A DNA stretch of 56,264 nucleotides, filler included, from Platydemus manokwari (taxonomy: Eukaryota): NCBI GenBank assembly GCA_037951405.1. It is 5 parts of 5 records of this genome, joined end to end, with 100 filler letters (N's around TTAATTAATTAA, not from the genome) between each part and the next. Parts side by side here need not be neighbours in the genome. Positions count along the whole stretch, not along the records: positions 1 to 12,881 come from JBBMOY011928050.1; 4 more parts are not named here. One strand, given 5' to 3'. A program made the position numbers and the translations under genes. The notes under the pieces were generated by a model, which was not told the origin of the DNA, searched no databases, and saw only the letters and a program-made list of their open reading frames with translations. Each line of letters opens with the position of its first letter. The stretch's first letter is position 1. Below, one piece after another: positions 1-10,800 of this stretch.

Positions 1-954
1 AAAAAAATTTTATATTAATTTATTCTTATTTTTAGTTAGTTTGGTTGGCTCAAAATGGCCTGGTTAGTTCCCCACAACTTCAAGACCAATCACTGGATCA
101 TATTGGAGTTTGAACTCGATGATGACAGCGTTTCTATTCGTAGGAACAATGATATTTGCCATACACAGGTAATTGGGGAGAAATGTAAGCGTAAATGACA
201 AATACTATTCATCAAGAGGACTCGTATTTATGCTAATCGATTCGGATTAATAATACAAACCTAGTCATTAATGAAAATTTTCGAATAAATTAAATAGTGT
301 GAAACGTCTGATTACCGGTTTTGCTCGGCGCTTTATACACCGCTTTCAACTAAATCTGCTCCTTTTAGACGCTTGAATCTAGTCTAAGTGAAAGATCCCC
401 TTTAATGTAAACTCGGGAATAGTACTTTTTGATCATGTTAAGATTGCTGCTTTGTAGTCATGCAGCTTCGATCTCACTGACCAAAATAATATACAACACA
501 TTTTTATTCCCAGATTAAATAATCACATTAAAACCCTATCATGCACCTCAACAATCAGATTAAAATGACTTTTATGATTCTAGGAGTCTGTAGAAGTGTT
601 TAACATTTATAATTATAGATTTGATAAACATATCTATTTCCTGAGAACATTTTCTGTCTTTTTAATTTTACAGTTTTGTTTTAATCTTTGTCCACTAATT
701 TGTAGAATTGTCTAAAATAAATCAAACAACACAATGAAGGAAATATATTATCGTAATAGAATTACATGTTGATAACATTTTCTGAAGAACCACTGATTAT
801 AAAAAATCAATTTTATTTCACATTTGATTATCATTTTATCACAAAATAGATTGCACACATCATGCAATTATAAATTAATGATTAAAACAAATTAATGAAC
901 TGTCATAGCAACTAGTATAAATATCGGTTGTGTTGAGCAAACAGTTAATGGGTA

Positions 955-1756
955 TTAATTATCATGATAACTGTCTAAATGTTTCTCATGTATCTCGATA
1001 AGATTTGTGATTTTGTCTAAATCATCTTCCTTTATCGTTCCGATGGAATTTTTAAATAAATTTCTGAAAGCCAACATCTTTTCGTCTTCGATTATTAAAC
1101 CAGAATAATTGCTCTTCGAAGAACTTTCATCCTCATCATAAAATGAATCGTTCGAGTAAGTATCTTCTTTATCCACAGACGTTTTACGATTTTCATTACC
1201 AACATTAGCTTCAGAAATTTTTCTCGTTGAAGATCGATTGATTTTCTTCACTAAATTTATCTCTTTATTCTGCTCAATTTCACCGTCTTCATTTAATATT
1301 TTATTGCTGTTAGAAATTTCTATTTTTTTCACCAATTTCTGGAAATCATCCATACTATCTTCTTTCATTTCGCATATTGAATTCCTAAAAAGACTGCGAA
1401 ATGATTGCGAAAAATCTAAATCGTCTTTATCATCATCTTCTGAACTATACTTCTCCTTAATTTCATCTCGTCGCATAGTACTTTTATATTCAGATACCAA
1501 GGTTTTCAATATTTCGATATTATCTTTGGAAATGTCGGCGATTGAAGCCCTAAACAATCTCTTAAATGATTCAGAAAAATCGGTTTCTTCCTCAAGGTCG
1601 GGTTTGACATCTAATTCGTTTTCAGCGAATCTTTCGATTTGACTTTCATGGTTTAAAATTAAATTTGGTTTTTCATCAACAATTTCTTTCTCAATGATTT
1701 TATTTTTGTTTTCTGAATCTTTATTTTCTTTAGGTTGATTAATTTCTGACGAAAAA
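955..1756 (-). CDS. Terminal exon of an uncharacterised acidic, low-complexity protein with three 29-aa internal repeats; start not resolved
   Basis: The frame of ORF 955..1557 stays open to about 1780 (FSSEINQPKENKDSENKNKIIEKEIVDEKPNLILNHESQIERFAENELDVKPDLEEETDFSESFKRL...). Acceptor CTAG ends at 1757 and a candidate GTAAAT donor sits at 1805. No in-frame ATG near the 5' end. Three ungapped repeats at the protein level argue for real coding sequence. Confidence 0.75.
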
Positions 1757-3161
1757 CTAGTGTAAGATGTTATATTCCAAATTTAAACTCGTGTTATTTA
1801 TTTACTATCCCTGAACGTCAAAATTATAATTACCAATCACAATTTTGAATGTTAAATCAATTTGTCAAATAACCATCACCTAAATCACACTTATAATGGC
1901 AAAATCAATAATAAAGCCACAGCCGAATCAGCACCCAAAATATAGAATAGAAACAAAAAAACGACCATAAAAATTGGTCATCAGAAAAATCACGTAAAAG
2001 AGTAAGTCAGATATTACACTTTTTATGGACGTGTTGTGTATGTTTACTGGTTGATTTAATTATTTCAATTCGTCGGAATAGTCTGCCCACTAGTTTGTCA
2101 ATAGATTCTCTTCTAACTCTTATGTCATTGGCTTATCTCAGTGTTTGTTATCTCTTATTGATGTGCGTCAATTGATAATCGAATTCTATTTATTTGAGTG
2201 GTTATTAGTACGTAAGTTTGTAGAGTCTGTGTGTATCGAACCTTTTGATGATATTTCGATAGGTATCTTGCTTTAGTTATGTTGCATACTCAACAAATGT
2301 ATATTCTATGTCAGAAAATATTCATGACGATGAATCGGTCGATCATTTTTATCTATTTTGTTTTAAACCCCAATAAAATAATCATTAAATTATGGAATTT
2401 GTAGAGCATATAATCAAATAAGACATAATAAATCATTCTATTGTTTTCCACATCATGAACCTCGGGCCAATGACAATCACACACACAGTTGCAATTTTAA
2501 TGTATATTCTTCCGATTCTCTTAATCTTTCTGTGTAAATAAATCAAATAACGACTTCTATAACTCAAATAATCTGCCATTTATTTTATATAATTAATAAT
2601 TCATGAATAAATAATATAATTATTATCAAATGAGTTTATGCAAATGAATGTTTTATCTGCATTCACCATTTTTATTGATTTAAGTGACAAATCCAGAAAC
2701 GAAAAGCTATACCAATGTAAATATGAGCTGCACACATGTGTGTATGTGTGTGTGTTTATACCAAATTACAGGGGTGTCTTTCTCAAATTATCTCACCCAG
2801 TCAATACCTTAAATGATTGATTGATATTAATAATAGCAAATGTGCTGTCTTGTAGACTGTGTTGTCTATAAACATGGATTGATAATTATAGTTTAAAAAT
2901 CAAATCTAGACACTGGAAGAGGGGATTAAATACCATGATTGAAAAATCAATAAATTGTAATTTCAACTGTCAGCTGTTGCTAGGGTAGAATCGATAAAAA
3001 TGAGACATTTAGCAGCGAATATCAGCGGAATATCATTACAACTATGAAAGTCGGTTATTTATATCTACGACAAGCAAGAAATTCCAAGGCAAATGGTCAA
3101 TAACACCGATAAAACACCGATATAACATTGATAAAATATCAAACCATCTATTGTCTCATGT

Positions 3162-4053
3162 TTAGACCATCAAAATATTCGGCATTCTGGCAATCAATGA
3201 ATTGATTCTCGCCACATCTATATCGGCAGCCCACAAATCCTTGATTCGCTCAATAATAATGGTTTTCTCATTTTTTCTTTGATCCCTGCACATTGTCAAT
3301 TCGTATCATTTATCGATCAATAAAACATACAATAAATCCATAACTGATGTCTGCGATCCGGGTAGAGCATCGACGGTCATTATGTAAATCATTTTTTTAA
3401 AGGGCGCATTTTCATGATCGAACAATCCTTGCAAATAAGTGCTAATAAGACTCGGCAATTTATTCAAAACTCCAATATCGACACAGAAATCTCTGTTTTG
3501 CATAGCATTTTCAATAAACAATTTAAGATCTTTCTTAATTGTTTCATCGGGCCTTTCAGGAGGGAGAAATTTTGAACAATTTTCACTTCGTAATAGATTA
3601 TGCGATTTCAATACCAGTGATAAATTTTGTTTAAATTGGTCAACATTATTCGTCAAAGATCCACTGGAACCAATCAATAAAACGGCCGGTTTTTCTATGT
3701 GTAAGTAATTTCTGAATGATGAGTTAGAGATAAAATAGAAACTCAACCTGTTACCCTGTCAGAAAATTGTTCAACGCAACATGTAAAATGTTTAAATAGA
3801 TTTTCTGATCTTCAAAAACATCATTTAAGGTAGTCTTGGTACGGAAAATCGGTACAAGATAATAATAATACATGTCTGATGGATGTTTTATTATTTCAAA
3901 ATGTTCAACTGGGGGAGGAGGCATTAGAATTGGAATTAAAGCCATTAGAAATATTAAAATAGCTGGAATAATTATCATTTTATAACCATATTTGCGCCTT
4001 TTTGGTTGATTCGATTTTTCTGGAGCGTATTTTGTTTCTTTTTCATTTTCCAT
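3162..4053 (-). CDS. Torsin-1A-interacting protein-like (LAP1/LULL1 family) type II membrane protein, 3 exons, about 267 aa
   Basis: Exons 4053-3755, 3711-3331 and 3285-3162 are joined in frame by GT-AG introns of 43 and 45 nt. Basic N-terminus (PKRRK), a TM segment (IIIPAILIFLMALIPIL), then PAVLLI, LFDHENAPFKKMIYIMTV (cf. LAP1 CDHENAAFKDVALVLTV) and C-terminal INSLIARM, where the Arg lines up with the LAP1/LULL1 arginine finger. Confidence 0.8.
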
Positions 4054-7825: not shown

Positions 7826-10800
7826 ATGGGTCAAAATGTTTCTCTTTGCTGTGGTGTCTTCAGAATTATTTTGTATAATGTAAATACATTTCATAACTTC
7901 ATATTTAAAAGTTTTCGTATAAAATGCATTTTTATCGAAGAAATGTTGTGATTATATTTTGTATTTTCAGATTTACAAACGTCTTTGCTGCATTCCGGAA
8001 ACGAAATATCTTCCAACTTGCAATATTACAATGATTGGAGTATCTAATGTTGGGAAATCTAGAATGCTTGCAGCCTTAAATAAAGAGAATCTCAAGACTG
8101 ATCCGACTATTGGTAAGTATAGATCTTTCTAAAATTATATTATAATCAGAAATTATTAATTCTAAAATTTTAATATCTTATATATTACTTACTATATTGT
8201 ATAATATCTTATATACCAGAAAAGAAATTGAATAATTGTTGAATATATTCTCTCCAAATATCATTATATTTGATAAAAATATCATCAAATTAATACAAAT
8301 ATTTTATTTTATTTTCAGGCTTCAATCTCAAAGCTGTGAAATTGAGCCATTGCATTCTAAACGTAAAAGAATTGGGCGGTAATCATGTTTCTATATTATT
8401 TTCAATTATCGATTTTTTTAATTTTTTCATCAATTTCGGTTAACTTTTTGGATTTAAAGGTTTTCATTGTGTGATGTTTTCATATTATTTGAAAATAATC
8501 CGAGCTTTTTAATCCCTAATAAATGGTTCGACCCCAACTCTGGGTAATTTCAATCGATTGACTCCTTTTCCTCACCACTACTGACAATATTTAGAGATAA
8601 CAGCATTTTTACAAACATAAATTCCGACGAATCTATTTTATATTCGTTTGTTATCATTAGGAAGAAACAATTTTACAGGTCTTCAACAATCAATGTGTTC
8701 ATCAGGAATCTTGATGTTTTGTTGTCATAGAGGGATGGTTTATATTGGAAATGTTAGTAGCGGCTACTTCACTTGCAATTGATGTTTCAACAAAAGAAGT
8801 CATGATTACGATTTTCTTAATATTTATTTCATAACAAATCAAACATTTTTCAAGCATATTTCTGGTGAGCTGTTTTTTTCAATCTTAATCAGATATAAAT
8901 ATTAAAATTACTTCATTTTAAACAACCAAATATAAATTTTAAAATATTTAATTTTAAAATATAAAATTTATTAAACTATTTTAAATAGTAATTAAAAAAT
9001 TTTTGTTTAAATTTTTATTCAAAGTTAATTAAAATTAATCCTCACAGTGTGTAAATCTTTATAAAATTGTAATGTTAATAAAACATAAATTATCGCGTAA
9101 AATGAAGATAAAAATGCTCTACAGACCGTCACAAACTTGTTATGTAATAATTATAATATAATGGCAGTTAATAATATGTGTGTCATGGCACTCTTCCATA
9201 TGGTCCAGGCCTCAAATCAAACATGATAAATACAAGAACATTATAATTAATTATACCGTTTAATGTCCATAATTATATATAGGGCGTTGAAACCATTTAA
9301 CGATAAGCCAAAGCTCACATCATTTATTAATTAGATATGGTTTTCGAATTTATTGCCGAGTTAAGTCATTTGAATTATTAAATGGTTTACAAGTTTGTAA
9401 GGAAATCAAGTTTTGCTGATTCAACTGAGTTTTCTCATATCTGATAGATTTCTGAATCCAAATTCCCTTGATTAGTAGCTATCTCTATTTTTCAGTGTAA
9501 GATTATATTTCCCATTATATCGGGCAATACTCCCCTATATTGAGTTGAACGCATCTGTTGTGATCTCTTCACAGTTCTATATCGACAAAGTCTTCATCGA
9601 AATAATATTAAAAACCTTGTAGAGTTTTTGAATTGCCAACTAATAGAATAATGGAGCAAATCAAGAGTCATTGGATTTTTTATTAAAAGTCTGAAAGGCA
9701 CTTATTGTAATGGGTGTAGAGCGTTACGAGGATGACAGATTAACAGGCGATAAATACACGAGTACATTTGATTAGCAAACTTTTCGAGAGTTATTTTTGG
9801 AATTAAAAGCATCTCTCTTCACTAATTCCATTCGTTACTATGGCAGCAAAATTCAAGAGCTATCTGATTATATAAAGGATATTTGTGCATCTCTTTTTGA
9901 ATTTTTAGATTTCAAACTTGTGCATCGAAATAATTCATAATCTACTTATGCGAAACGATTTGATGCCTGACAGCATTTAGGAGCAATTTCCTGGGAGATT
10001 AATTACGACGATTTCGAAGTAACTGGAAAATATAGCACCGTAAATTATTATTTAGAAGAATTTCATAATAATTTTTAAGAACTTTTACGGATAATTCCGT
10101 ATGGTTCAATATTTTTCGGTGGACAAGTTTTTAACATTTATAATCGATATGTTTTCAATAGCTCATGATTATGTTGAATTATGTTGTTCTTTCCTTAGGA
10201 TTTTTATAAATGTTTCATCGTTTTCGGTCTGAAATCAATCAATACAATAATTTCTTTCTCTGCAAAGTGCCTTTCCTCACCTTTTCATTTTTCTATTTTT
10301 CGTTATATTATTTCATTATATTTTCATAATTATCGTTATTAGGCAGCGATGATGTGCGAAAATTTTGGCCCAGATATTTCTCAAACACGGAATCATTGAT
10401 GATCATAATAAGATTATCTAATTCTCATAATATGTCAGAAGAATTCACCAATCAACATGAGAAATTATCTGAAATATTTGATCTACATAAACATCATGAT
10501 TTACCACTGTTGATCATTATAACTTCAGAATATCTCAATGAAACTCATGAGTCCATGTTGATGGTACTACAATAGTATTGATAAATTATGAATAAAATAA
10601 TATTCAGATCAATGATGTCATTGGTAAGTCCACAAAAGCTAATAGATATCTCCAATGCGTTGTTGGTGATGTAGTCAAAGATTGTGATAAAATTAAGGAG
10701 ATTTTAGACATGTTTTGTTTTAAATTTTTATTGAATTAAATGTATTTTTTAAATATATTTATTCTTAACATTTATCTTTCCACTAAAATTTTCATTAAAA

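What the first reader, a model, noticed from the sequence alone, without database searches (positions are those of the whole stretch)
997..1581. Orphan protein with three copies of an unrecognised 29-aa FxxLF[RK]xSI module
Seen: three ungapped repeats separated by acidic, disordered-looking linkers: DFSESFKRLFRASIADISKDNIEILKTLV (1581-1495), DFSQSFRSLFRNSICEMKEDSMDDFQKLV (1416-1330) and EKMLAFRNLFKNSIGTIKEDDLDKITNLI (1083-997). The invariant pattern is F-[KR]-x-L-F-[RK]-x-S-I-x5-D-x7-L-[VI], and each copy follows an Asp/Glu run. The copies differ at many positions yet keep the pattern and spacing, which suggests selection. I do not recognise the domain. Inference: a multivalent docking module of two short amphipathic helices (FxxLF-type) with a possible phospho-switch Ser.
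Basis: partly seen in the sequence, partly recalled or inferred. Interest (0 to 1): 0.7.

Follow-up and report, generated by a model that had tools for sequence, protein, structure and literature searches.

The report
Three helical-hairpin repeats, unplaced protein tail
The three repeats are real and lie in the C-terminal tail of a larger, single-copy, mostly disordered protein of an AT-rich eukaryote; no known family matches it, but its function, its expression and its claimed orphan status are all untested.

Summary
Observation confirmed. On the minus strand, window 958-1773 is one open frame of 272 codons holding exactly three ungapped copies of a ~35-aa unit (F-[KR]-x-L-F-[RK]-x-S-I-x5-D-x7-L-[VI]). 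Their similarity exceeds shuffled controls. The copies share only 45-59% of their bases, and 5 of 7 invariant residues use different codons, so this is an old internal duplication kept at protein level.

It is not a 200-aa stand-alone protein. Another contig of the same genome (C1236676) overlaps window 1758-1682 exactly and carries 328 more codons that run in frame into this ORF, giving a last exon of about 570 codons. In the window itself a dispersed repeat element abuts position 1758.

The gene is single-copy and the module occurs nowhere else in the genome. Pfam, PDB sequences, the ESM Atlas, a word search and a full HMMER pass over 1.84 billion proteins gave nothing. A control search with the neighbouring gene was also blank, so the libraries probably cover this lineage poorly and 'orphan' is weak.

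Each copy is predicted, at low confidence, as an amphipathic helix-turn-helix after an acidic stretch. Multivalent docking is plausible but untested. No RNA data were found. Interest is modest.

The parts
958..1758 (-). Coding 3' part of the terminal exon (267 codons) that forms one frame with the 328-codon open frame of contig C1236676. It holds all three repeats.
   Evidence: Open frame. Exact 77-nt overlap and in-frame continuation. Chance of 272 open codons at this base composition is about 4e-11.
955..957 (-). Stop codon TAA
1486..1590 (-). Repeat copy 1 (35 aa, EETDFSESFKRLFRASIADISKDNIEILKTLVSEY).
   Evidence: 68.6 bits. Predicted helices at residues 65-79 and 83-99.
1321..1425 (-). Repeat copy 2 (35 aa).
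   Evidence: 71.6 bits. Predicted helices at residues 121-133 and 138-155.
988..1092 (-). Repeat copy 3 (35 aa).
   Evidence: 69.4 bits. Predicted helices at residues 230-243 and 249-271.
1682..1758 (-). The 77 nt identical to the last 77 nt of contig C1236676 (3346-3422). This is an assembly-graph fork where two different upstream sequences meet.
   Evidence: In run X1 the 139-nt unitig 1620-1758 has about twice the depth of its neighbours.
1759..2308 (-). Dispersed repeat element of unknown class that directly abuts the coding sequence. Its terminus reads ...TTACACTAG. It may extend to about 2512.
   Evidence: More than 40 copies at 64-82% identity plus one at 94%. Copy C375200 diverges from the window within a few bases of the 1758/1759 junction. 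A run X1 joint lies at 2512.
812..817 (-). AATAAA, 138 nt downstream of the stop: a possible poly(A) signal. This is weak evidence, because the hexamer is common in AT-rich DNA.

Best explanation
Window 958-1758 (minus strand) is the C-terminal part of the last exon of a single-copy protein-coding gene in an AT-rich (~28% GC), 911-Mb eukaryotic genome. No relatives were found. The coding-competent form of the exon is contig C1236676 (2437-3422) continued by window 1681-958, about 570 codons.

The product is rich in Ser, Glu, Lys, Asn and Asp and is probably largely disordered. It has a Ser/Arg-rich N-terminal stretch, a central all-helical region and an acidic tail.

The tail carries three anciently duplicated copies of a ~35-aa unit. 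Each unit is an acidic lead-in, a strongly amphipathic basic helix (F-x-x-L-F core), a turn around the invariant Ser-Ile, and a second amphipathic helix ending L-[VI].

Most likely mechanism (inferred, not shown): the three units are equivalent molecular-recognition helices that fold on binding. They would give the protein three sites for one partner surface, or for each other. The acidic linkers would act as flexible spacers.

Shown: the repeats, protein-level conservation, single-copy status and lack of a known family. Inferred: disorder, the helix-turn-helix shape (low-confidence model), binding function and any regulation through the Ser.
For: - The repeats are real and exceed shuffled controls.
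- The copies share only 45-59% of their nucleotides. Synonymous sites are saturated for copy 3 against the others. Five of 7 invariant residues use different codons. This is the pattern of selection on the peptide.
- The long open frame is very unlikely by chance at this composition (4e-11 for 272 codons, 2e-22 for 570).
- The frame continues across the contig overlap.
- The gene and the module are single-copy in the genome, so they are not transposon-borne.
- The AlphaFold2 single-sequence model puts a helix-turn-helix on each copy and little regular structure in the long spacer between copies 2 and 3.
- The highest hydrophobic moments of the tail (0.8-0.9) fall on helix 1 of copies 1 and 2.
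- Ser, Glu, Lys, Asn and Asp make up 54% of the residues.
- No known family matches: Pfam, PDB sequences, the Atlas, word searches and full HMMER over 1.84 billion representatives.
Against: - No expression evidence: the only run holding the sequence is DNA-like.
- No orthologue is available, so between-species conservation is untested.
- Structure confidence is low (pLDDT 38.9), so the hairpin shape is only a secondary-structure call.
- In the window's own contig the exon is cut at 1758 by a repeat element, with a stop 5 codons upstream. At least one assembled form is therefore not an intact gene.
- A minor allele in run X1 changes the invariant F (F129I) and skips 46 nt in the linker.
- Nothing bears directly on binding, valency or phosphorylation.
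Confidence: 0.5

Rival explanations
1. Structural repeat rather than docking sites. The three hairpins pack against each other or against the central helical region into a helical bundle or a short HEAT/ARM-like solenoid, and the invariant Ser is a helix cap.
For: - The units are helix-turn-helix of about 30-35 aa, the size class of HEAT/ARM hairpins.
- A profile of the units gave marginal matches to a 14-aa stretch of the Stu2 TOG1 domain (QLFRNSVGDISRDD, E 0.016) and to designed armadillo repeats (E 0.26-1.7).
- Copies 1 and 2 read S-x-x-[DE], a capping-box pattern (seen directly in the sequence).
Against: - The copies are separated by 20-80 aa of acidic or polar spacer that is not predicted to form a compact fold, unlike contiguous solenoid repeats.
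- AlphaFold2 predicts no tertiary packing (pTM 0.17).
- Pfam HEAT, ARM and TOG models do not match even at E 10.
- The PDB matches are at chance level for a 3-sequence profile.
Confidence: 0.22
2. Acidic activation-domain-like motifs in a nuclear protein. These would be amphipathic aromatic helices in an acidic context (F-S-[EQ]-S-F-[KR]-x-L, the same i, i+4, i+7 spacing as the p53 F19/W23/L26 helix) that contact a coactivator-type groove.
For: - Copies 1 and 2 have F-x-x-x-F-x-x-L preceded by acidic runs.
- The upstream part is Ser/Arg-rich and has basic clusters (RKRSK) compatible with nuclear localisation.
- The comparison with p53 rests on my own knowledge, not on a tool.
Against: - Copy 3 has Lys at the position of the first Phe, so the triad is not conserved.
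- Helix 1 is net basic, unlike typical acidic activators.
- No DNA-binding or other nuclear domain was found.
- The idea rests on pattern resemblance alone.
Confidence: 0.1
3. The window's copy is non-functional: a repeat-element-disrupted or rearranged allele, a partial duplicate, or an assembly chimera. Under this reading the ORF seen here is a relic even if an intact gene exists or once existed.
For: - In the window a dispersed repeat ends exactly at 1759 and a stop lies 5 codons upstream of the junction.
- No sequence of C1236676 other than the 77-nt overlap occurs anywhere in the 12.9-kb window.
- A complete, unrelated gene ends only 1.4 kb upstream.
- Run X1 shows forks at 1758 and 1620, with the 139-nt node at about twice the depth.
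Against: - Downstream of 1758 the genome holds only one assembled copy, so the intact form (C1236676 plus this sequence) must use these same bases.
- The frame is intact to a TAA stop, with no frameshift or internal stop in 267 codons.
- The repeats show protein-level conservation.
Confidence: 0.15
4. Chance similarity within low-complexity, AT-rich sequence, with no real repeat or gene.
For: The composition is biased (S/E/K/N/D-rich). One of 500 shuffles reached a diagonal score of 85.
Against: - Two independent diagonals exceed the shuffles, and the second best (66) exceeds the maximum of the second-best shuffles (54).
- The conserved residues are aromatic or aliphatic, not the abundant polar ones.
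- Each HMM domain scores about 70 bits.
- The ORF probability is about 1e-11.
Confidence: 0.02

Closest known systems
FxxLF nuclear-receptor interaction motif (androgen receptor N-terminus and AR coregulators, binding the AF-2 groove; PMC12428597)
   Same: All three copies contain a literal F-x-x-L-F core on a predicted amphipathic helix.
   Different: The conserved unit here is much longer (~35 aa, two helices, with invariant S-I, D and L-[VI]). It is repeated three times and sits in a protein with no other nuclear-receptor cofactor feature. Binding to any receptor was not tested. The FxxLF core alone is too short to be diagnostic.
Repeated molecular-recognition helices in disordered proteins (for example the p53 TAD F19/W23/L26 helix, or the repeated amphipathic subdomains of calpastatin); from my own knowledge
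   Same: These also have short amphipathic helices embedded in acidic, disordered sequence, present in several diverged copies, with conservation limited to the hydrophobic face.
   Different: There is no detectable sequence relationship. Copy 3 lacks the first aromatic position of the p53-like triad. The partner is unknown.
HEAT/ARM/TOG helical-hairpin repeats
   Same: The units are helix-turn-helix of about 30-40 aa. There is a marginal 14-aa match to Stu2 TOG1 and to designed ARM repeats.
   Different: The units are separated by long polar spacers instead of stacking contiguously. No Pfam HEAT, ARM or TOG match appears at E 10. No packing is predicted.
EF-hand
   Same: Helix-loop-helix of about 30 aa with an 'F-x-x-F/L-F' entering helix and acidic residues after it.
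   Different: There is no D-x-[DNS]-x-[DNS]-G calcium loop, and no Pfam EF-hand match even at E 10.

Membership tests
AR-type FxxLF interaction motif | F-x-x-L-F core on an amphipathic helix | tested here: met
   The cores are FKRLF, FRSLF and FRNLF. Helices are predicted at those positions, and the hydrophobic moment reaches 0.8-0.9 on helix 1 of copies 1 and 2.
AR-type FxxLF interaction motif | Binds the AF-2 coactivator groove of a steroid or nuclear receptor | not testable with these tools
   This needs a binding assay. I did not check whether the organism has a suitable receptor.
EF-hand (Pfam EF-hand clan) | 12-residue Ca-binding loop (D-x-D/N-x-D/N-G...E) between the two helices, with a profile match | tested here: not met
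   The loops read SIADISKD, SICEMKED and SIGTIKED. There is no Pfam match at E <= 10 or E <= 1.
HEAT/ARM/TOG repeats | Contiguous stacked helical hairpins recognised by family profiles | tested here: not met
   No Pfam match. PDB profile matches are marginal and partial (E 0.016 over 14 aa). The units are separated by 20-80 aa spacers.
p53-TAD-like (MDM2-groove) helix | Hydrophobic triad at i, i+4, i+7 (F-x-x-x-W/F-x-x-L) conserved in the motif | tested here: inconclusive
   The triad is present in copies 1 and 2 (F66/F70/L73 and F121/F125/L128). Copy 3 has K at position i.
Transposon- or virus-derived protein domain | Multi-copy in the genome, or a match to a TE or viral family | tested here: not met
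   Both halves of the exon are single-copy. The HMM of the unit finds no other locus. No Pfam match. The adjacent repeat element (1759-2308) is a separate, non-coding neighbour.

The most novel reading that the evidence does not exclude
The ~35-aa unit is a new, lineage-restricted helical-hairpin domain. It would act as a triple docking platform whose affinity is switched by phosphorylation of the invariant Ser in the [RK]-x-S-I context. That would make it a previously undescribed multivalent scaffold, possibly nuclear, in this animal lineage.
Probability: 0.12. Interest if true: 0.45.

Novelty: new variant of a known kind. Interest (0 to 1): 0.28.

Why it matters
If the gene is expressed and conserved in relatives, it would add an uncharacterised repeat unit to the catalogue of short helical recognition modules. 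It would also give a handle on a protein with no detectable relatives in a poorly annotated animal genome.

As it stands, it is one more taxon-restricted, low-complexity protein with internal repeats, and these are common in eukaryotes.

The more practical result concerns annotation. The gene is split between two contigs, and the window's contig places a repeat element in the middle of the exon. Automatic annotation of this assembly would therefore truncate or miss the gene.

Tried and rejected
Searches that found nothing:
- Pfam on the 272-aa tail, on the 328-aa upstream part and on each repeat alone: nothing above noise. The best was IFT52_central at E 0.041, below its cut-off.
- Word-index search of 5.8 billion proteins with both parts: none.
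- Full HMMER search of 1.84 billion representatives with the tail: zero hits at E <= 0.001.
- ESM Atlas feature search on both parts: no usable hit.
- PDB sequence search with both parts and with the repeat profile: only chance-level matches.

Structure:
- AlphaFold2 on single sequences of the tail and of the central region gave pLDDT 38.9 and 46.4. I ran no fold search, because models this poor give meaningless matches.

Control for library coverage:
- A word search with the neighbouring membrane-protein exon was also blank. Absence of relatives therefore cannot be read as true orphan status.

Other attempts:
- Chaining contigs upstream of C1236676 failed, because that contig starts in a repeat with more than 1000 candidate copies.
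- I searched the assembly for the X1 joint 1620 / 8 nt / 2512 as a same-strand pattern and found nothing. The local graph stays unresolved.
- Rfam found nothing in the window.
- A fourth, decayed copy between copies 2 and 3 is suggested by the spacing (55 and 111 residues), but the HMM did not detect one.

The joined product of the two contig parts was not searched or folded. Only its length and composition were computed inside a script.

Full report
**1. What is in the sequence**

The piece is contig C1928050 of a 911-Mb assembly in about 2 million contigs. It is about 28% G+C, and the gene structures seen here have small GT-AG introns, so it is eukaryotic.

On the minus strand, window 1773-958 is an open frame of 272 codons ending in TAA at 957-955.

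**2. Is it more than chance?**

Ungapped BLOSUM62 self-diagonals score 77, 66 and 47. In 500 shuffles the best diagonal averaged 40.8 +/- 6.4, and the second best never exceeded 54. An HMM of the units scores about 70 bits on each copy and finds no fourth copy.

At this base composition, a 272-codon open frame has probability about 4e-11.

At DNA level the copies are only 45-59% identical. Synonymous sites are saturated between copy 3 and the others. Five of the seven invariant residues are encoded by different codons, for example Leu by TTG, CTT and TTA. The similarity is therefore maintained at the protein level after an old duplication.

**3. The ORF is not a whole protein**

There is no start codon at the head of the frame.

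- A protein search of the organism's own genome found a second contig, C1236676, whose last 77 nt equal window 1758-1682 exactly.
- Upstream of the overlap that contig carries an open frame of 328 codons (L003:2437-3420) that continues in the same frame into the window's ORF.
- The exon is thus about 570 codons long (length and composition only, computed).
- It is preceded in C1236676 by a roughly 35-nt GT-AG intron, a small Ser-rich exon and probably more exons.
- C1236676 positions 1150-2300 are single-copy. Its first ~100 nt belong to a repeat with more than 1000 candidate copies at 94-98% identity. The 5' end of the gene therefore could not be reached.

I searched the two contig parts separately, by reference. 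The joined product was not searched or folded.

**4. What the window has upstream of 1758**

- Window 1785-2308 belongs to a dispersed repeat with more than 40 copies at 64-82% identity.
- A 94%-identical copy (C375200) shares the terminus ...TTACAC[A/T]AG and then diverges within a few bases of the 1758/1759 junction. So a repeat-element end abuts the interior of the exon.
- A stop lies 5 codons upstream of the junction.
- No other C1236676 sequence occurs in the window.
- A complete, unrelated gene ends at 3162, only 1.4 kb upstream.

The one public run that holds the sequence is X1, kept as Logan contigs and DNA-like. It shows a 139-nt unitig (1620-1758) at depth 48, against about 21-25 for its neighbours. 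There are forks at both ends of that unitig and a joint linking 2512 to 1620 through 8 extra letters. That joint, written as a same-strand pattern, is not in the assembly.

The local structure is therefore unresolved. It could be a heterozygous repeat insertion, a partial duplication of the 139-nt segment, or a chimeric contig. The in-frame continuity makes C1236676 plus window 1758-955 the coding-competent form.

**5. What kind of protein**

- Both halves are single-copy in the genome, and the 35-aa unit occurs in no other locus. It is not transposon cargo.
- Ser, Glu, Lys, Asn and Asp make up 54% of the residues.
- The upstream part has Ser/Arg-rich stretches, a basic cluster (RKRSK) and a central region predicted as all-helical at low confidence (pLDDT 46).
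- For the tail, AlphaFold2 without an alignment gives pLDDT 38.9 and no tertiary packing. It does place a helix, a short break and a second helix on each copy: 65-79/83-99, 121-133/138-155 and 230-243/249-271.
- The largest hydrophobic moments in the tail (0.8-0.9) fall on helix 1 of copies 1 and 2.
- The 15 residues before the copies carry net charge -6, -4 and -2.

**6. Relatives and known families**

Nothing was found in any of the following:

- Pfam
- PDB sequences
- the ESM Atlas
- the word-index search
- a full HMMER pass over 1.84 billion cluster representatives

The repeat profile gave one marginal 14-aa match to Stu2 TOG1 (E 0.016) and weaker ones to designed armadillo repeats. I treat these as chance-level leads.

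A control word search with the neighbouring membrane-protein exon was also blank. The libraries probably contain few or no proteins of this lineage. 'No relatives found' is therefore not the same as 'orphan'.

**7. Most likely mechanism**

I read the units as three equivalent molecular-recognition helices in a disordered acidic tail. They would give the protein three sites for one partner surface, or for self-association.

This is an inference from anatomy: amphipathic helices, conservation limited to the hydrophobic face plus Ser-Ile, Asp and Leu-[Val/Ile], and variable polar spacers.

The literal F-x-x-L-F core recalls the androgen-receptor motif that binds the AF-2 groove (PMC12428597). The conserved unit here is far larger, however, and no receptor link was tested.

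The invariant Ser lies in an [RK]-x-S-hydrophobic context compatible with basophilic kinases. It also sits at the helix 1 / turn boundary, with S-x-x-[DE] in two copies, so a capping role explains it equally well.

Rivals are a packed helical-repeat domain, activation-domain-like helices, and a non-functional or disrupted copy.

**8. Polymorphism**

Run X1 carries a minor contig (depth 5.7, against 10.5 for the window-like form). It changes the invariant Phe of copy 2 to Ile (1389 A>T on the plus strand, TTT to ATT) and skips 46 nt of the acidic linker between 1428 and 1475. Whether other letters replace the skipped ones is not known. This is a single contig and should not be over-read.

**9. 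Verdict**

This is a real, protein-level-conserved triple repeat in the tail of a larger, single-copy, unannotated gene that matches no known family. Expression, orthologues and function are untested, and the gene is broken across contigs by a repeat element in this assembly. The biological interest is modest.

Noticed in passing
window 3162-4053 (-): A separate gene upstream on the same strand. It has an ATG at 4053, a short basic N-terminus, one predicted membrane-spanning segment (IIIPAILIFLMALIPILM), and a ~48-nt intron near 3750. A further possible intron, placed by eye, lies near 3300, and the stop is at 3162. It has no Pfam, PDB or word-search match. A 56%-identical paralogue with one in-frame TGA lies on contig C1339093.
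   Followed up: partly
window 10354-10575 (+): An open frame resembling part of an Arf/Arl small GTPase (Pfam Arf, E 1e-3, below its cut-off). By eye, the place where the NKxD guanine-specificity motif is expected reads TSEY, so it may be a divergent or decayed Arf-like exon.
   Followed up: partly
window 1620-1758 and 2512: In run X1 this 139-nt segment has about twice the depth of its flanks and forks at both ends. One contig joins 2512 to 1620 through the letters AGAAAATC. This suggests a local duplication or an insertion with a long duplicated flank, but the joint is not found in the assembly.
   Followed up: partly
window 1359-1475: A minor allele in run X1 (depth 5.7 against 10.5). It has 1389 A>T, which changes the invariant Phe of repeat 2 to Ile, and it skips 46 nt in the acidic linker.
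   Followed up: partly
L003 (contig C1236676) 1-100: The contig starts in a very abundant repeat (over 1000 candidate copies, 94-98% identical), which explains the assembly break. A (TA)n/(TG)n microsatellite follows at about 175-235.
   Followed up: no
L003 about 2402-2436: A very short (~35 nt) GT-AG intron separates a small Ser-rich exon from the large last exon. The window's membrane-protein gene also has an intron of ~48 nt, so the genome uses tiny introns.
   Followed up: no
window 1238-1642 (+): A 134-aa antisense open frame overlaps the repeats. It is Ser/Leu/Phe-rich, as expected for the complement of a GAA/AAA-rich coding strand, and I take it to be an artefact of composition.
   Followed up: no
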